64,000 nucleotides of DNA from Hemiscyllium ocellatum (Eukaryota), in the NCBI RefSeq assembly GCF_020745735.1, contig NC_083407.1, forward strand, positions 35,145,857 to 35,209,856. The letters are read 5' to 3'. The notes under the pieces were generated by a model. That model was given only the letters and a program-made list of their open reading frames with translations, was not told where the DNA came from and made no database searches. The position numbers and the translations under genes were made by a program. Shown one piece after another: positions 15,881 to 62,499 of this stretch (its first letter is position 1; every line of letters starts with the position of its first letter).

Positions 15881-16884
15881 CTTGTTGTGGTTCCGTTCGG
15901 TGTTCTCTGTACTATCACGTCTAGGAATGGGAGTTGGCTATCCTTTTCTTCTTCTCTCGTGAATCGGATTCCTGTGAGTGTGGTACACAGGAAAACAACA
16001 CACACAGACCAAGTCCTAAACTATGAAAGTAACCACCCCAACACACACAAACGAAGCTGCATCAGGACACTATTCAAAAGAGCCACAACACACTGCAGTA
16101 CACCAGAACTGCGAAAAGAGGAAGAGGAACACCTATACAAGGTATTCGCCAAAAACGGATACCCGCGCAACTTTATCAACAGATGCCTAAGAGATAGACC
16201 ACGGAACGAGGACATGCCACAACCAAAAGGACTAGCCACACTACCATACATCAGGAGCGTTTCAGAACTGACAGCCAGACTACTGTGACCCTTAGGACTC
16301 ATTACAGCACACAAACCAACAGCCGTGCTCAGACAACAACTTACTAGAACAAAGGAGCCGATACCCAACATGAGCAAAACTAATGTAGTTTACAAAATAC
16401 CATGCAAGGACTGCACAAAACACTATATAGGACAAACAGGAAGACAGCTAACAATCCGCATACATGAACATCAACTAGCCACGAAACGACACGACCAGCT
16501 ATCACTAGTAGCCACACATTCAGACAACAAGCAACATGAATTCGACTGGGAAAACACTACTATCATAGGGCAAGCCAGACAGAGAACAGCCAGGGAATTC
16601 CTAGAGGCATGGCATTCATCCACAAAATCCATCAACAAACACATCGACCTGGAACCAATATACCAACCACTACAGCAGACAGCTGAAACTGACACCTGGA
16701 AGCGGCAAGGACAGACCACTATAAATACTGGAAGAAACATCAAAGAAGCACTTTGCAGGAGGCTCCAGAGCACTGATGATGTTTCCTAGCCAGGGGACGA
16801 AACGTTTGCAACAAAAACTTCCAGATCGGCGAACAGAAGCACAACAACAAGCACCCGAGCTACAAATCTTCGCACAAACCTTGA
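15881..16884 (+). mobile_element. Penelope-like element family B with a 5' inversion; RT C-terminus + GIY-YIG + hammerhead + tail
   Basis: VHRKTTHTDQVLNYESNHP... and VVYKIPCKDCTKHYIGQTGRQLTIRIHEH (GIY-YIG) lie in one frame broken by a single TGA at 16286. TSD AAACAAATG at 15872-15880 and 16885-16893. Confidence 0.92.
16770..16809 (+). ncRNA. Hammerhead ribozyme (family B), intact, sense to LRP1B
   Basis: GCA-CTGATGA-T-GTTTCCT-agcc-AGGGGAC-GAAAC-GTT-TGC: 7-bp stem II, ACGT stem III, GUU triplet. Confidence 0.8.
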
Positions 16885-25258: not shown

Positions 25259-26157
25259 AATATCATATGCAGATTTTGTCTTTTGATTCATTGTTGTTCA
25301 TCTGAAGAATTTGTTTGAATTTGCAATCAATACTGACAATGTCAATAATATCTAGAAGTCTAATATCTTAAAGCATTATCCTTCCACATCATAAATGTGC
25401 ACATGAATGTGAAACAGTGCAGACTGAAGGAATGAAAGCCTGATTTTGCTGACTGCTGTGAGGGTTGTAAGTGTAATGAATTTGACCCAGTTCCAAGTGG
25501 CTTATGTCCACAAAATTCTCTATAATATGACACTAATTATCACTAAATTGGCAATCTCTTTTAGGTACTATAAGAGTAGTTGGGACAGAAAATAGAAATG
25601 TCATATTGATGCAGTAGAAGATTATCACTAGGAAGAGCAATGAACTTGATTCCATATATCACACCATACCTGGGTGAGCAGTAGTTAATGGTGACATTGA
25701 GTCAAAAGAGTCAAAAGCTTTTTACTCTCATAATCATGAAAGGGGAAGGAAAATCTTAAAGAAAACAAATTGAAAATATCAATTTTTCAAAACTGAAGAC
25801 AAAGTTTTTTTTTAATTAAGGTAAAGCAAAGAGGTAATTGAGACACCATTTTCCAAGCAACAAGAGAGTAATGTATGAAATTTCCCATTTTGGGAAAAAA
25901 AAAGATTTGTCATCAAAATCAAGTTTCCCTTTTCATCAAAGATTTAGGGCATTGCTCAGTTCTGTTATAAATATGATCTACAAATGTGAAATTACAATAA
26001 ATATAGTACAAAGAAGGAAGTGGCCTTTGTGTTGCCTCAGATTAAAAAAAACAAAGTTCTTCACAATTGATTTAATTCATTCAGAGGTTTAGTTATCTGC
26101 TTAAGTGGAAACAACCTCTTTTATTGCAAATACAGTTATTGACCTCTGTATTAAGGT

Positions 26158-26289
26158 AGGAGAAAGTGAGGACTGCAGATGCTAGAGATCAGAGCTGAAA
26201 AATGTGTTACTGGAAAAGCGCAGCAGGTCAGGCAGCATCAAAGGAGCAGGGGAATCGACGTTTCGGGCATAAGCCCTTCTTCAGGAATC
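26158..26289 (-). mobile_element. 132-bp Penelope pLTR mini-insertion (hammerhead + tail)
   Basis: Perfect 16-bp TSD ACCTCTGTATTAAGGT at 26142-26157 and 26290-26305. Confidence 0.9.
26253..26288 (-). ncRNA. Hammerhead ribozyme (family A), core intact
   Basis: Reverse complement: attc-CTGAAGA-A-GGGC-ttat-GCCC-GAAAC-GTC-gatt. Confidence 0.8.
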
Positions 26290-31919: not shown

Positions 31920-32045
31920 GTACTAATCTGTGTAGTGTGAACAACGGTGGATGCTCCCAGCTCTGCTTGCCAGTCTCAGAAACAAGGAAAACATGCAAGT
32001 GCACTGTGGGATATCAGCTACGCAGTGATAAAATGTCATGTGAGG
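31920..32045 (+). CDS. LRP1B: LRP1B-like internal coding exon (126 nt), EGF-like domain
   Basis: Acceptor catttag|G and donor GAGG|gtaagt; phase 1/1. Translates (G)[41 protein letters not shown](G), a 6-Cys EGF repeat of the LRP family. Confidence 0.93.
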
Positions 32046-33701
32046 GTAAGTGTTATTGTCAACTGAAGGAAACAACAGCTTTCCTGTGTGGAGAAAAGTA
32101 ATTAACTTCTTTTTATCCTGATTCTAGTCAGAGAAGCTCAGCTACCTTTGGTGCTGGTAATCAGGATAGCCATATAGTATCAGCTTCCTGCTGTTGCTCT
32201 TTCAGCTCATTTACCTTCACTGAGGTCCTTCTCCATTTGAAACCAGACAAAAAGTGTAATTGGTACCTATTCCCAAAAAATCCAGTAACAAATCCTGTCC
32301 ACCATGAGGTAAATTGAGGGGTTTACATTCTCATGTGCAGCTGATGTGTAGAGAACAGAATGTTTACCACCTCCGCTTTTATATCTTCACATAACCCTTG
32401 GAAGGCACAGTGACAAATGATGTGAGAGGCAGCTTTAAAACAATAAAACACATCACTCATAAAGATTGCTGTGCTTCTTTCTGGATATACATGTGGCTGT
32501 GTGTCACAGCAAAAATAAAATTGTAACGACACAGCAGATGGTTAGATGCAGCTATCAGAGGAATACACACACTGTTTACACAGTAATGCCCTCAATTAAT
32601 TCTAACATGAAATCTTCCCTGATGAAGGAAAAAGATGCATTCAGAACATAGTGCTGATGCAGCTTGCAGAGCATAGCAAGAAGTTGATAATTGCATAAGC
32701 TGAGTTGATTCTATAATCCAGGATGAAGTTAAGGTGTATTAATTTCAATAGAGATCTATTTCTAATTTGAAATGCTTCTATTAAAACAGTTAATTTCCTT
32801 TGTAGGGTCATGCAAAAAAATATTTTATACTTAAAATTGAAGCAAATATTTTCCAACGGTAATTGGAATTTAGTTTGTTCCAGATCTATTTTGCATAGTT
32901 GTTTCCCCCCTTTTATTTGGTCTGGTAGCTTTGATTGCAAAAGCAAATGCCCCGTGTGAATTTTCTGCTCCATCACTGTTGACAATTGAAAATACACTTT
33001 AAACAGCTGAATAAAATGTTCTGCAGTTACTATCAAGAATTTCAGATCACACTGCCTTCACTTCAAAGAATGCTATTGAAATTAGTCATTAAAGGCTCAA
33101 AAGAATCTAACATTGACAAGAAGAACACACTTTTCCTAAATTATAACTGTAACCAATAGCAATGTTAATAGAATATTGAAAGGAATACATTTGTTAAAAT
33201 AAATTAGAAATATTTTTTGAGAACCAGTTTTGATAGTTGACAATAAAATTACACTAAGCAGTAAATTTTTATGCCTGGGGCAACTTTTCAACTTTTCACA
33301 TAGTGTAAAGAGGTTGTACAGACCAGTTGGTCGTCATAGAAGCGGTCTGATTTTCACTTCCAATAAAGAAATTATTCATTTACAGTTCTTCATCCAATAT
33401 AGTGATAGAAATACTGCTTTAAACTTGTAGTAGAAATTGTGGAAAATGAAGCACATTGCATCAAACAAAAATATTGATGTTAGGAAAGTGAAAGAGCATT
33501 GCAAATTAATACTATTTTGAACTATTTCTGCTCTGATATAACTTGACATCAGTCAAAGCCTAGTCAGAAATGTCTACTTTTGTACATGCTTGAAAACAAT
33601 ATTGTCAAATTATAAATTGTGAAATCAATAGCTAATCAAATCTTATTTTCCATTTACTTATTTTCTAAGGGAATAACATAAAGAAAAATGATTTATTTAT
33701 T

Positions 33702-33833
33702 CATTCCTGAAGATGGGCTTATGCCCAAAACGTCGATTCTCCTGTTCCTTTGATGCTGCCTGACCTGCTGCGCTTTTCCAGCAACACATTTTTAAGCTCT
33801 GATCTCCAGCATCTGCAATCCTCACTCTCCTAC
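33702..33833 (+). mobile_element. 132-bp Penelope pLTR mini-insertion with an inactivated hammerhead (33703-33738) next to the LRP1B splice acceptor
   Basis: Perfect 14-bp TSD ATGATTTATTTATT at 33688-33701 and 33834-33847. Core reads CTGAAGA-T-GGGC-ttat-GCCC-aAAAC-GTC. Confidence 0.9.
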
Positions 33834-33853
33834 ATGATTTATTTATTGTCTAG

Positions 33854-33985
33854 GTTTTGAATCTTTCCTGATGTATTCTCTTCATGAAGAAATCAGAGGA
33901 ATATCACTTGAACCCAATGATAAATCAGATGCCTTGCTGCCAATTTCCGGTACATCGCTTACTGTAGGAATAGACTTCCATGCAG
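33854..33985 (+). CDS. LRP1B: LRP1B-like internal coding exon (132 nt), start of the next YWTD propeller
   Basis: Acceptor ttgtctag|G and donor GCAG|gtttgt; phase 1/1. Translates (G)[43 protein letters not shown](G). Confidence 0.93.
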
Positions 33986-34959
33986 GTTTGTATCATTTTT
34001 TGGCAATTTTGTTCATATTTGAAGGATTAATGAATGCATGTTCATTGGAGCAAGATTTAATTTTATTTGTCACAATTAAATTACAGGCTGAAGTATCAGC
34101 TATCTTTAAGAGGGAACATATTTTTTATTAACCTATTTGCTAGCATAAAACTTTCCCATGAATCTTTGGTTTGGCTTTTGTTATATTTTTCAAATTGACT
34201 CAGATAAACCCTTATGTGATTGCTACATGTGACCATAATTAATTAATAAGTGTTTGACTGATGTATTGACTGCAAATTGTAATGAGTATTAATGTACGCT
34301 AGATTACACCTTTTCCTTATCTGAACATGGGTCAAAATCTTTGGCTGACCTTGAAGTAAAGAAGGGCATTTAAGTTTTAAAGATTGACTTTTCATTTTGA
34401 ATACATAACACTCCTGTTAATACTGTTACTTTAATCTGCCGATAAATTAGCCTCATACTTATCTCAAAATGACCAAATAAAACTTAACAAACATCAGCCA
34501 TGAAGGCAACCAGTCTTTATTTGACTCTGCAATGTAATAAACACAGTAAATGAGGCATATCAAGAATTCCTAAATAGGAAGTCAAAAATGTCATGCATAC
34601 AGATATTTCATGGTAAACAATATGACAAGAATCTAACACAACAATGATCAAAGTTGTGAAGTGTCATGTTTCTGCAACAGCCACCTCAGTCTCAGTTAGG
34701 ACATAAGCCATCTGTACTGCCTGGCTGGAACCCTGATTCCAAAAGGGATTGAAAATGGGCAGAAGAATGAAGCTAAATGAATCAGTCTTTGAGAGAACCT
34801 GTGCCAGCATGATGGCTGAAATATTCATTTCTCTGATGCCGCCACAGAAGTGAGCTTAATAACTGTGTTTTGGGTGCATAATTCTTCTCCCAGAGTAACA
34901 TTCCCAGTACTTAAAATGAGTAAATGGGCAAAATTCATACTTTGTTGGGGGTTGCTGTT

Positions 34960-41288: not shown

Positions 41289-41751
41289 CTGAAAATGTGT
41301 TGCCGGAAAAGCGCAGCGGATCAGGCAGCATCCAAGGAGCAGGAGAATCGACGTTTCTGGCATAAGCCCTTCTTCAGGAATGAGGAAAGTGTGTCCAGCA
41401 CGCTAAGATAAAAGGTAGTGAGGAGAGGTCAGGAAGAAGCCGGAGTGGGATGGGGGCAGAGGGGTCAGGAAGAATCCCACCCCTCCTGATCTCTCCGCCC
41501 CCACCCCACTCTGGCCTATCACCCTCACCTTGACCTCCTTCCACCTATCGCATCTCCAATGCCCCTCCCCAAAGACCCTCCTCCCTACCTTTTATCTTAG
41601 CCTGCTGGACTCACTTTCCTCATTCCTGAAAAAGGGCTTATGCCTGAAACGTCGATTCTCCTGCTCCTTGGATGCTGCCTGACCTGCTGCGCTTTTCCGG
41701 CAACACATTTTCAGCTCTGATCTCCAGCATCTGCAGTCCTCACTTTCTCCC
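41289..41751. mobile_element. Head-to-head inverted Penelope pLTR insertion with two hammerheads: 41346-41381 (-) and 41622-41657 (+)
   Basis: 15-bp TSD CATACTATAAGTTAG at 41274-41288 and 41752-41766. The arms are reverse complements of each other. Confidence 0.9.
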
Positions 41752-53607: not shown

Positions 53608-54732
53608 TATCTCGGGCGACCGACTCAACACAGACGTCTATTATAAACCGACTGACTCCCACAGCTACCTGGACTACACCTCCTCCCACCCTGCCCCCTG
53701 TAAAAACGCCATCCCATATTCCCAATTCCTTCGTCTCCGCCGCATCTGCTCCCAGGAGGACCAATTCCAACACCGCACAGCCCAGATGGCCTCCTTCTTC
53801 AAGGACCGCAGATTCCCCCCAGACGTGATCGACGATGCCCTCCACCGCATCTCCTCCACTTCCCGCTCCTCCGCCCTTGAGCCCCGCTCCTCCAACCGCC
53901 ACCAAGACAGAACCCCACTGGTTCTCACCTACCACCCCACCAACCTGCGCATACAACGTATTATCCGCCGCCATTTCCGCCACCTCCAAACGGACCCCAC
54001 CACCAAGGATATATTTCCCTCCCCTCCCCTATCAGCGTTCCGCAAGGACCACTCCCTTCGTGACTCCCTTGTCAGATCCACACCCCCCACCAACCCAACC
54101 TCCACCCCCGGCACCTTCCCCTGCAACCGCAGGAAATGTAAAACTTGCGCCCACACCTCCACACTCACTTCCCTCCAAGGCCCCAAGGGATCCTTCCATA
54201 TCCGCCACAAGTTCACCTGTACCTCCACACACATCATCTATTGCATCCGCTGCACCCGATGTGGCCTCCTCTATATTGGTGAGACAGGCCGCTTACTTGC
54301 GGAACGCTTCAGAGAACACCTCTGGGCCGCCCGAACCAACCAACCCAATCACCCCGTGGCTCAACACTTTAACTCCCCCTCCCACTCCACCGAGGACATG
54401 CAGGTCCTTGGACTCCTCCACCGGCAGAACACAACTACACGACGGCTGGAGGAGGAGCGCCTCATCTTCCGCCTGGGAACCCTCCAACCACAAGGTATGA
54501 ATTCAGATTTCTCCAGCTTCCTCATTTCCCCTCCCCCCACCTTGTCTCAGTCGGTTCCCTCAACTCAGCACCGCCCTCCTAACCTGCAATCCTCTTCCTG
54601 ACCTCTCCGCCCCCACCCCACTCCGGCCTATCACCCTCACCTTGACCTCCTTCCACCTATCCCACCTCCATCGCCCCTCCCCCTAGTCCCTCCTCCCTAC
54701 CTTTTATCTCAGCCTGCTTGGCTCTCTCTCTT

Positions 54733-54768
54733 ATTCCTGATGAAGGGCTTATGCTCGAAACGTCGAAT
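54733..54768 (+). ncRNA. Minimal type-I hammerhead ribozyme (family A), intact, sense to LRP1B
   Basis: ATTC-CTGATGA-A-GGGC-ttat-GCTC-GAAAC-GTC-GAAT; predicted cut after C54764. Confidence 0.85.
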
Positions 54769-55758
54769 TCTCTATTCCTGAGATGCTGCCTAACCTGCTG
54801 TGCTTTGACCAGCAACACATTTGCAGCTGTGATCTCCAGCATCTGCAGACCTCATTTTTTACACAGGGTAATGTCATGGCCAATCAGAATCAATCTGCCT
54901 GGTTTAAAATTTTTTAAAAAAGGAAAGCTTGGTAAGTTATTTCTCAAACAACATCTCTACTGCTCAGAGTTCACATATCAATTCATCAGCATTCTCCTCT
55001 CATACAGCATTAATGTTGTTTACTTCTTACATTGACATTTCTTGCTCTTTCTCCAGATGAATACAAGACAAAAAGCTTACACAAAATATGTCGGTTTTCA
55101 GCAATACCCAAGTTCTGCACTACCAATCAACTACTTTTATGAAGAAAAAAATAATGCATTAATATAATTAGGACAAACATCCATGCAACCTTCACTCAGT
55201 CTTATGTCTCCCAGCCTGTTGGTAGCCTATCCTTACCACTTCACCACCCTCCCCAAATATAGAGTTATCTGAATTCTTTTCCTCTGGAATTATTGATGGG
55301 CCATTCTTTTTGCTCCTATGATTCATTCTTATGATCTAAATAAAACCTAAACTACATCTTCTCAATGCAGCCTTTGGGGAGGCATTGTCAAGCTTGTGCC
55401 CAATTTAGGTCAAAGTTCAAAATTCCAGATCCTGACCCCTGTTGAAAATGTTTCTGTATATTTGTGTTAATATTTTTACAAATGAGACAAAATGGAACTT
55501 GACTGTGCTTTCAGTATAGGTTGCTCACATGTTTATACATGGTCTCATACATGAAGAACAGCATTGAAGTTCAGCAAAGGAATCATGTTAATGCATACCT
55601 TGCAGGCAGACAAAAGAAAATTGATGTGAACTTGAGGAAGTATGCGCCAAAATAAAGGTTCATTGAAAAGATAAAACATTCTTGTTAGACTTTGACTTGT
55701 GAACATCCTGTGAAATTCGTGACCTTCTGAAATTTCAATTATCTAATTTTATTTACAG

Positions 55759-55893
55759 GGAATGATACAATCTATTGGACAGATATGGGAAGGAGTACAA
55801 TTAGCAGAGCTAAACGAGATCAGACCTGGAGGGATGATATTATCACAAATGGCCTTGGACGGGTTGAAGGCATAGCGGTTGATTGGATAGCTG
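55759..55893 (+). CDS. LRP1B: LRP1B-like internal coding exon (135 nt), YWTD repeat; not in the ORF track
   Basis: Acceptor atttacag|G and donor GCTG|gtatga; phase 1/1. Translates (G)[44 protein letters not shown](G). IYWTDMG and [12 protein letters not shown] favour LRP1B over LRP1. Confidence 0.93.
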
Positions 55894-55984: not shown

Positions 55985-56114
55985 GTAATATATATTGGTC
56001 AGATTATGGCTTCAATATAATAGAAGTTGCAAGATTTAATGGTTCTTTTCGCTATGTGGTCATCTCCCAAGGGCTTGATCAGCCACGTGCAATAGCTGTC
56101 CATCCAGAAGAAGG
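55985..56114 (+). CDS. LRP1B: LRP1B-like internal coding exon (130 nt), YWTD repeat; not in the ORF track
   Basis: Acceptor ctttcacag|G and donor GAAGG|gtaaac; phase 1/2. Translates (G)[42 protein letters not shown](G). Confidence 0.93.
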
Positions 56115-62283: not shown

Positions 62284-62499
62284 TGAAAATGTGTTGCTGG
62301 AAAAGCGCAGCAGATCAGGCAGCTTGCAAAGAGCAGGAGAATCGACGTTTCGGGCATGAGCCCTTCTTCAGGAATCCTGAAGAAGGGCTCATCCCCGAAA
62401 CGTTGATTCTCCTGCTCTTTGGATGCTGCCTGACCTGCTGCGCTTTTCCAGTAACACGTTTTCAGCTCTAATCTCCAGCATCTGCAGTCCTCACTTTCT
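62284..62499. mobile_element. Palindromic Penelope pLTR insertion with two back-to-back hammerheads: 62340-62375 (-) and 62373-62408 (+)
   Basis: 14-bp TSD CCTTTCACCAGAGG at 62270-62283 and 62500-62513; 90-bp arms around 62374. Confidence 0.92.

What the first reader, a model, noticed from the sequence alone, without database searches (positions are those of the whole stretch)
33688..33853. Ribozyme mini-element inside an LRP1B 3' splice site: catalytic core dead, and it may now supply the branch point
Seen: a 132-bp sense-strand insertion whose 14-bp TSD ends at 33847, only 6 nt before the exon start at 33854. It pushes the original upstream intron sequence 146 nt away. Its hammerhead reads GCCC-AAAAC instead of GCCC-GAAAC (G12A at 33727). 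Established: G12 is the catalytic general base. The element's tail contains CTCAC (A at 33824, 30 nt upstream of the exon), a yUnAy branch-point match, followed by pyrimidines with no AG before the acceptor. Inference: the insertion is tolerated because it donates a branch point and lost self-cleavage. The G>A change is at a CpG, so it could also be neutral decay.
Basis: partly seen in the sequence, partly recalled or inferred. Interest (0 to 1): 0.72.

Follow-up and report, generated by a model that had tools for sequence, protein, structure and literature searches.

The report
Penelope retrotransposon tail in splice acceptor
A 132-bp stub of a known shark retrotransposon (a Penelope-like element with its minimal hammerhead motif) landed six bases upstream of an exon of an LRP1-family receptor gene; it probably now supplies the intron's branch point, while its "dead" ribozyme looks like ordinary mutational decay.

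Summary
A 132-bp sense-strand insert (33702-33833) is flanked by a perfect 14-bp target duplication. The second copy ends 6 nt before the acceptor AG of an exon that starts at 33854. The motif reads A where all 10 other window copies read G12, at a consensus CpG.

The insert is the 5'-truncated tail of a Penelope-like element (PLE). It carries the published "minimal hammerhead": core, bulged base, 4-bp helix II and GUC, with no helix III loop. Rfam hammerhead models do not detect even the G12-intact mini-copy I tested.

The branch-point idea is reasonable. The duplication preserves the last 20 intron bases. Every position from which a branch point could still select this AG lies in the element or the duplicated target. 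CUCAC at -30 is the best candidate and belongs to the family consensus. It is unproven; an A at -17 in the duplicated target is the rival.

The "tolerated because the ribozyme died" idea is not supported. Single minimal hammerheads show no detectable self-cleavage, five other sense copies in this gene keep G12, and the CpG is a mutation hotspot.

The scan has already described such mini-insertions elsewhere in this genome, but not at a splice site. LRP1-family identity is confirmed; LRP1B specifically is not. Interest is low to moderate.

The parts
31920..32045 (+). Upstream EGF-domain exon of the LRP1-family gene, ending ...MSCE plus G. The donor GTAAGT begins at 32046.
   Evidence: reading frame, CSVNNGGC motif, and the split codon G|GT continuing into the exon at 33854.
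32046..33853 (+). Intron of 1808 nt. Its last 166 nt hold the duplicated target and the insert.
33688..33701 (.). Target-site duplication, upstream copy (ATGATTTATTTATT).
   Evidence: two copies, 100% identical, spacing 146.
33702..33833 (+). Sense-oriented 132-bp 5'-truncated tail of a Penelope-like element (the mini-insertion).
   Evidence: eleven homologous copies in the window. Copy 26156-26288 has the same boundaries and its own target duplication. Copy 54733-54854 follows a GIY-YIG ORF.
33707..33734 (+). Minimal hammerhead motif: CUGAAGA (33707-13), bulged base (33714, T here, A in all 10 other window copies), helix II GGGC/GCCC with loop UUAU (33715-26), A12-A-A-A (33727-30, G12>A at 33727), C-G-U-C17 (33731-34).
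   Evidence: Architecture matches PMC4209133. No Rfam hammerhead hit for this copy or for an intact copy.
33779..33780 (+). Decoy acceptor AG inside the element (TTTTCCAG|C). Using it would add 73 nt and give a premature stop.
   Evidence: plus my reading of the frame.
33808..33809 (+). Decoy acceptor AG inside the element (ATCTCCAG|C). It is the last AG before the true acceptor. Using it would add 44 nt and give a premature stop.
   Evidence: (AG at -46/-45), plus my reading of the frame.
33821..33825 (+). CUCAC, the best branch-point candidate (A at 33824, -30). It is part of the family consensus tail.
   Evidence: full yUnAy match, 74% pyrimidines downstream, no AG in between. (CTCAC present in sister copies).
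33834..33847 (.). Target-site duplication, downstream copy. It holds the rival branch-point candidate AUGAU (A at 33837, -17) and most of the polypyrimidine tract.
33852..33853 (+). Acceptor AG.
33854..33985 (+). 132-nt exon, phase 1-1, encoding the start of a YWTD beta-propeller ([43 protein letters not shown]).
   Evidence: translation; LRP2 structures, E 2e-13; 78% identity to carp LRP1Ab 1877-1917, collinear with the exons at 55759-55893 and 55985-56114.

Best explanation
A Penelope-like retrotransposon made a very short, 5'-truncated copy of its 3' end: the minimal hammerhead motif plus the tail where its reverse transcriptase starts. That copy inserted in the sense orientation into the AT/T-rich polypyrimidine tract of an acceptor in an LRP1-family gene. 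The staggered cut duplicated 14 bp, so the last 20 intron bases (tract plus AG) are unchanged. This is the main reason the acceptor still works. The insert replaced a purine-rich stretch at -21 to -41 with the element's pyrimidine-rich end. That end carries a consensus branch site, CUCAC, at -30. The element also brings AG dinucleotides further upstream. A branch point that still selects the true AG must therefore lie between about 33795 and 33840, inside the element or the duplicated target. A33824 is the most likely choice (inferred, not shown). The G12>A change is a CpG transition that arose by neutral decay. It played no part in making the insertion tolerable, because a lone minimal hammerhead with no helix III does not cleave itself.
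For: Identity of the insert. There are 11 copies in the window. The same tail lies about 130 bp after a GIY-YIG ORF. Head-to-head inverted pairs occur at 62286-62498 and at 41292-41747, as described for PLEs. A second mini-copy, 26156-26288, has the same ends and its own duplication.

The motif. Core positions differ from the majority in 2 of 110 cells, against 10.6% elsewhere (Fisher p=0.0016). N7 varies U/A. The bulged base, the G10.1-C11.1 pair and the palindromic ACGU all match the min-HHR description.

The target. The top-strand break falls after ...TTATT, in line with the AT-rich/ATT preference of the PLE endonuclease.

The splice site. The AG-free zone is 44 nt. By the rule 'zone plus about 15 nt upstream', all candidates are in the element or the duplicated target. 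CUCAC scores 4/4 at -30. The reconstructed empty site has only 3/4 candidates, at -17, -32 and -40, and an AG at -26/-25.

Neutral G12A. It is 1 of about 5 private substitutions plus one 2-bp deletion in 132 bp. The CpG is altered in 4 of 11 copies. Five of six sense copies keep G12. A single min-HHR is inactive. The PLE hammerhead is protein-assisted and is dispensable for insertion in vitro.
Against: There are no RNA data, so the branch point is not mapped and correct splicing of this allele is assumed from the intact, conserved exons. The two AGs inside the element have acceptor contexts as good as the true one, so some mis-splicing is possible. Only 11 copies could be compared, and all are intronic in one gene. 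The two private changes in the motif (33714 A>T and 33727 G>A) happen to form a new U-A pair that extends helix II. The post hoc chance of that is about 1%, which is slightly odd for pure random decay. No orthologous locus could be fetched, so age and fixation are unknown.
Confidence: 0.7

Rival explanations
1. One reading: the insertion survived because it both donated a branch point and lost self-cleavage through G12A. With G12 intact it would have cut the pre-mRNA and been removed by selection.
For: G12A is the only G12 change among the 11 copies, and it sits in the copy closest to an exon. G12A slows hammerhead cleavage by more than 500-fold in minimal ribozymes and about 10^5-10^6-fold in full-length ones. 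Both core-killing changes in the window (G12A here, G8A at 41621) are in sense copies, 2/6 against 0/5 antisense. I estimate this is not significant (about p=0.45, my own calculation, no tool call).
Against: A single minimal PLE hammerhead shows no detectable cleavage. The anole PLE hammerhead needs PLE protein. Without a helix III loop the motif can only act with a second copy, whose core would cut this copy's GUC regardless of its own G12 (inference from topology). Five sense copies in the same transcript keep G12. The change is a CpG transition at a site altered in 4 of 11 copies.
Confidence: 0.08
2. The branch point is not in the element. It is the A of AUGAU at 33837 (-17) in the duplicated target, which existed before the insertion. 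On this view the element is a passive passenger that adds only pyrimidines.
For: AUGAU has U at -2 and a pyrimidine at +1, with 79% pyrimidines downstream. It is present in both the filled and the reconstructed empty site. The empty site had an AG at -26/-25, which favours a branch point close to the exon.
Against: A distance of 17 nt is at the short end of usual branch-point spacing. CUCAC at -30 matches the consensus fully and sits at the typical distance.
Confidence: 0.25
3. The insertion is not neutral. It is a young or polymorphic, mildly harmful allele that diverts part of the transcripts to the element's own acceptor-like sites or to exon skipping.
For: TTTTCCAG|C and ATCTCCAG|C inside the element have about 69% pyrimidines and a CAG. 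The true site has about 62% and a TAG (my count). Both decoys would give premature stops. In mammals, transposable elements are depleted within 50-100 bp of exons and are rare within 20 bp of acceptors.
Against: The copy has about 4-5% private divergence, so it is not brand new. The neighbouring exons are intact and 78-86% identical to carp LRP1Ab. If the branch point is at 33824, both decoys lie upstream of it and cannot be chosen.
Confidence: 0.15
4. G12A and the bulge A>U were already present in the source RNA, as a variant with a 5-bp hairpin, and were not acquired after insertion.
For: The two changes are complementary and extend helix II by one U-A pair. Hammerhead catalytic mutants insert normally in vitro. 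Another PLE family in the window, at 16773, has U at the bulged position.
Against: No other copy in the window carries either change. The G>A is the expected CpG transition.
Confidence: 0.1

Closest known systems
Minimal hammerhead motifs (min-HHR) of Penelope-like elements (Cervera & De la Pena 2014, PMC4209133)
   Same: CUGANGA and GAAA boxes. An unpaired base between A9 and G10.1. A G10.1-C11.1 pair. A short helix I (4 pairs). No helix III loop, with palindromic ACGU. A GUC site. The motifs occur mostly as single copies from truncated PLEs and as nearby pairs on opposite strands.
   Different: Helix II here is 4 bp, shorter than the 7-8 bp reported for Schistosoma families. This particular copy has A12 and U at the bulge. 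No shark example is named in the paper as far as I read it.
Poseidon PLE of Anolis (PAc; Frangieh et al. 2024, PMC11167929)
   Same: The hammerhead lies just upstream of the internal site where reverse transcription starts, so the 3' end of insertions is hammerhead plus roughly 100 nt of tail. The endonuclease prefers AT-rich ATT targets. Both DNA strands are cut and extended, which fits the head-to-head pairs.
   Different: In PAc the ORF starts at stem II. In this shark family the corresponding frame stops after 16 codons. The enzymology of the shark element has not been tested.
Fixed-start Penelope mini-insertions noted earlier in this genome (scan notes s1-146989 and s1-170732)
   Same: Same class of short product, starting at the base of the hammerhead and flanked by target duplications.
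   Different: This copy is the one that sits inside a 3' splice site. Those notes concern the origin of the fixed 5' end, which I did not resolve.
Transposable-element insertions near acceptors ('hazardous zones', Zhang et al. 2011, PMC3088655) and the AG-exclusion-zone logic for branch points (Gooding et al. 2006, PMC1431707)
   Same: A short, truncated element lies within 20 bp of an acceptor. The branch point is inferred from the AG-free zone.
   Different: Those data are mammalian. Here the element is sense-oriented and seems to preserve the acceptor, where most such insertions disrupt it.

Membership tests
Hammerhead ribozyme (PLE minimal type) | Conserved core C3-U4-G5-A6-N7-G8-A9 and G12-A13-A14-A15.1 | tested here: not met
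   This copy has A at G12 (33727). At family level the core is met: 9 of 11 copies are intact, with 2 of 110 core cells deviating against 10.6% elsewhere.
Hammerhead ribozyme (PLE minimal type) | Helix II hairpin closed by G10.1-C11.1, with an unpaired base 5' of it | tested here: met
   GGGC-UUAU-GCCC, predicted as the minimum-free-energy hairpin. The bulged base is A in all 10 other window copies and U here.
Hammerhead ribozyme (PLE minimal type) | Helix I between the bases 5' of C3 and those 3' of the cleavage site | tested here: inconclusive
   AUUC against GAUU gives 3 pairs plus a U.U mismatch in this subfamily. The CUGAUGA subfamily has 4 clean pairs (GAAU/AUUC). No covariation was seen.
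Hammerhead ribozyme (PLE minimal type) | GUH cleavage triplet and palindromic 15.2-16.2, with helix III formed only between two copies | tested here: met
   GAAAC-GUC with no loop; ACGU is self-complementary. However, cofolding of two copies prefers a GUCGAU self-pairing over ACGU.
Hammerhead ribozyme (PLE minimal type) | Match to curated hammerhead covariance models (Rfam) | tested here: not met
   No hammerhead hit at the gathering threshold in the whole window. None up to E=10 around this copy or around an intact copy. This is expected for a motif that lacks helix III.
Hammerhead ribozyme (PLE minimal type) | Self-cleavage | not testable with these tools
   Literature only: a single min-HHR is inactive and dimers are weakly active. 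The anole PLE hammerhead is protein-assisted.
Penelope-like element | ORF with reverse transcriptase and GIY-YIG endonuclease next to the hammerhead-bearing repeat | tested here: inconclusive
   ORF 53786-54601 matches Pfam GIY-YIG at E 1.3e-4, 22.7 bits against a cut-off of 22.6. It lies about 130 bp upstream of tail copy 54733-54854. The reverse-transcriptase part was not examined.
Penelope-like element | Typical insertion scars: 5' truncation, variable target duplications, inverted head-to-head copies | tested here: met
Spliceosomal branch site | yUnAy motif 18-40 nt upstream of the AG, followed by a pyrimidine tract with no intervening AG | tested here: met
   CUCAC, with its A at -30, 74% pyrimidines downstream and no AG in between.
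Spliceosomal branch site | Lariat formation at that adenosine | not testable with these tools
   No RNA data are available.
LRP1B | Orthology to LRP1B as opposed to LRP1 | tested here: inconclusive
   Three exons are collinear with carp LRP1Ab at 78-86% identity, and the best solved relatives are LRP2. No LRP1B comparator could be obtained. The 21.8-kb intron, and an unchecked scan note that places the gene's introns 420 kb upstream, fit a giant gene such as LRP1B.

The most novel reading that the evidence does not exclude
Sense-oriented Penelope tails may be ready-made acceptor modules, consisting of a branch site plus a pyrimidine run. Because the element's endonuclease likes T-rich ATT targets, the tails can land inside polypyrimidine tracts and take over branch-point function of constitutive exons. 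In this copy the paired changes at the bulge and G12 would have been favoured because they lock the hairpin and remove any residual cleavage risk.
Probability: 0.1. Interest if true: 0.5.

Novelty: new member of a known kind. Interest (0 to 1): 0.27.

Why it matters
Insertions this close to an acceptor are rare and usually harmful. This one shows how a target duplication can leave the acceptor core untouched while the element replaces the branch-point region. If RNA data confirm the branch point at 33824, it would be a clean natural example of a retrotransposon tail taking over a splicing signal of a conserved, constitutive exon. It does not reveal a new kind of element or ribozyme, and it gives no evidence that hammerhead activity is selected against in introns.

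Tried and rejected
1. Rfam at the gathering threshold on the whole window, and at E up to 10 around this copy and an intact copy, gave no hammerhead model hit. I therefore judged the motif against the published min-HHR description.

2. Searching for the orthologous site failed by every route. An exact look-up of the ORF spanning the exon found nothing. A homologue search with the 44-aa exon found no candidate. A search with the 97-aa open frame across exon and intron found nothing significant. Empty-site and timing tests were therefore not possible.

3. A metagenome scan for the motif, allowing either CpG decay product, found no contig, so there is no wider census of G12 against A12.

4. The representative search with a neighbouring exon, followed by cluster names, gave LRP1Ab (carp), LRP2-like proteins and unnamed fragments. 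It could not separate LRP1B from LRP1. I did not fetch the 86%-identical short fragments, because they concern a different exon and may be host contamination.

5. I considered that the element's 5' end might be produced by hammerhead cleavage and rejected it. The cleavage site (after GUC, 33734) is 33 nt inside the element.

6. I considered an ORF starting at the ATG created by the bulge change, as in the anole element, and rejected it. The frame stops after 16 codons (33761-63).

7. I first placed the exon end at 33987 and expected a frameshift on skipping. On re-reading, the exon is 33854-33985 (132 nt), so skipping would be in frame.

Full report
**What is there**

Reading 33400-34200 and the repeat search confirm a perfect 14-bp direct repeat, ATGATTTATTTATT. 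It sits at 33688-33701 and 33834-33847 and brackets 132 bp (33702-33833). Six bases after the second copy (GTCTAG) the exon begins at 33854.

The exon translates to [43 protein letters not shown]. Its first two bases, GT, complete a Gly codon begun by the last base (32045) of an upstream EGF-domain exon...[12 protein letters not shown]...MSCE-G. That exon has a GTAAGT donor. Two further exons, at 55759-55893 and 55985-56114, continue the frame.

Exons 2-4 align collinearly with carp LRP1Ab residues 1877-2006 at 78-86% identity. The best solved relatives are LRP2 structures. The gene therefore belongs to the LRP1 family and lies on the + strand.

I could not separate LRP1B from LRP1. The 21.8-kb intron, and an unchecked scan note placing the same gene 420 kb upstream, fit LRP1B.

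One correction to my first pass: the exon ends at 33985, with donor GT at 33986-87. It is 132 nt long and phase 1-1.

**What the insert is**

A 29-nt probe and then blastn with the 132 bp found 11 copies in the window, 6 on + and 5 on -.

- Several copies share further homology upstream, so the 132 bp is the 3' part of a longer element.
- Copy 54733-54854 lies about 130 bp after an ORF (53786-54601) that matches the GIY-YIG endonuclease domain. The match is borderline but above Pfam's cut-off.
- Copy 26156-26288 has the same two ends as ours and its own 12-16-bp duplication.
- Copies 62286-62375(-) and 62375-62498(+) are joined head to head at the same 5' position.
- Copies 41292-41382(-) and 41621-41747(+) form a wider inverted pair.

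These traits are described for Penelope-like elements. Most minimal hammerheads are single motifs from truncated PLEs or nearby pairs on opposite strands. The anole enzyme cuts and extends both strands at AT-rich ATT sites. It starts reverse transcription about 110 nt downstream of the hammerhead region.

Here the top-strand break falls right after ...TTATT. Follow-ups elsewhere in this genome reached the same classification for such mini-insertions.

**Is the hammerhead real?**

No Rfam hammerhead model matches, even at E up to 10 and even for a copy with G12. The motif does fit the published minimal PLE hammerhead point by point:

- CUGA-N-GA;
- one unpaired base;
- helix II beginning with G10.1-C11.1;
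- GAAA;
- the palindromic C15.2-G16.2 with no loop;
- GUC;
- a short helix I.

Across the 11 copies the ten invariant core positions deviate in 2 of 110 cells, against 10.6% for the other 80 positions (p=0.0016). The free position N7 is U in one subfamily and A in the other. I accept the motif as a family-level min-HHR, with two caveats. The copies are related and not independent. Helix I is weak in this subfamily, with a U.U mismatch.

**The G12 change**

Position 33727 is A in our copy and G in the other ten. G12A slows cleavage by more than 500-fold in minimal hammerheads and by about 10^5-10^6-fold in full-length ones. [quoted passage not shown] "Dead" is therefore fair in practice.

Nothing suggests the change was needed for the insertion to survive.

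- A single min-HHR had no detectable activity, and dimers or trimers had little.
- The anole PLE hammerhead did not cleave without PLE protein. Its catalytic mutants inserted normally.
- With no helix III loop the motif cannot fold alone. In a two-copy fold the 15.x strand of one copy pairs with the 16.x strand of the other. The partner's core therefore acts on this copy's GUC, whatever this copy's G12 is. This is my inference from the topology.
- Five other sense-strand copies in introns of the same gene keep G12: 30226, 41621, 48783, 54733 and 62375.
- The C11.1-G12 CpG is altered in 4 of 11 copies on both strands.

Our copy has about five private substitutions and a 2-bp deletion relative to its nearest kin. 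With 10-11 core bases, one hit is unremarkable.

One oddity remains. The other private change in the motif, 33714 A>T at the bulged base, pairs with A33727 and lengthens the hairpin by one U-A pair. The post hoc chance is about 1%. It could mean that both changes came from a variant source RNA. No other window copy has them.

**The splice site**

The 14-bp duplication plus the 6 bases make up exactly the last 20 intron bases. The pyrimidine tract and AG are therefore identical before and after insertion. What changed lies upstream of -20.

In the empty site, reconstructed by removing the element and one repeat copy, that stretch is purine-rich (AACATAAAGAAAA). It has an AG at -26/-25 and only partial branch-site matches, at -17, -32 and -40.

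In the filled site the stretch is CCTCACTCTCCTAC, with a full yUnAy match (CUCAC, A33824) at -30 and 74% pyrimidines downstream. CTCAC followed by a pyrimidine run belongs to the family consensus tail.

The last AG before the acceptor is at 33808-09. Under the published rule, candidates are sought in the AG-free zone plus about 15 nt upstream, because AGs within about 12-15 nt of a branch site are bypassed. The search space is thus about 33795-33840, all of it element or duplicated target.

A branch point left in the old intron sequence, now at least 153 nt upstream, would meet AGs at 33710-11, 33779-80 and 33808-09 first.

I rate an element-derived branch point at about 0.6-0.65, mostly A33824 and possibly A33802. 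I rate AUGAU at -17 in the duplicated target at about 0.25-0.3.

The element also brings two acceptor-like sites, TTTTCCAG|C and ATCTCCAG|C. Either would give a premature stop if used. They are harmless only if the branch point lies downstream of them or very close upstream.

**Context and verdict**

In mammals, transposable elements are depleted within 50-100 bp of exons and are rare within 20 bp of acceptors. Those found there tend to be short and truncated. A vertebrate survey of hammerhead-bearing PLE derivatives also reports a deficit in introns.

The position is thus unusual, but it has a simple explanation. The endonuclease likes T-rich ATT targets. The duplication preserves the acceptor core. 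The sense-strand tail happens to look like a branch site plus pyrimidine tract.

The element and its ribozyme motif are known kinds, and the scan has already described the same mini-insertions elsewhere in this genome. The new point is only this copy's position. Branch-point donation is plausible but unproven. The link between ribozyme death and tolerance is not supported.

No orthologous sequence could be retrieved, so the age, fixation and timing of G12A remain open.

Noticed in passing
window 62286-62498: Two copies of the same Penelope tail are joined head to head at 62375, both starting at the base of the hammerhead. One arm is cut short at about 90 nt, while the other runs to the normal tail end.
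   Followed up: partly
window 41292-41382 (-) and 41621-41747 (+): An inverted pair of longer copies, each with upstream repeat homology, separated by about 240 bp. The + copy has G8>A and C11.1>T. The - copy has C11.1>A.
   Followed up: partly
window 26156-26288 (-): A second mini-insertion with the same 5' and 3' ends as the one studied, an intact core and its own 12-16-bp target duplication (TTAATACAGAGG core). The shared 5' end lies 33 nt upstream of the predicted cleavage site, so ribozyme cleavage did not make it.
   Followed up: partly
window 33714 and 33727: The two private substitutions within the motif (bulge A>T, G12>A) are complementary and extend helix II by one U-A pair. The T also creates an ATG (33713-15), followed by only 16 codons.
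   Followed up: partly
window 16773-16802 (+): A minimal hammerhead of a different family: CTGATGA, a U bulge, a 7-bp helix II, then GAAAC. It is probably a second Penelope-like lineage.
   Followed up: no
window 53786-54601 (+): A 271-aa ORF with a borderline GIY-YIG match, about 130 bp upstream of tail copy 54733-54854. It looks like the C-terminal part of a 5'-truncated Penelope element. The reverse-transcriptase part was not examined.
   Followed up: partly
window 33725-33727 column across all 11 copies: The C11.1-G12 CpG of the motif is changed in 4 of 11 copies (C>G, G>A, C>A, C>T), making it a local mutation hotspot inside the otherwise conserved core region.
   Followed up: yes
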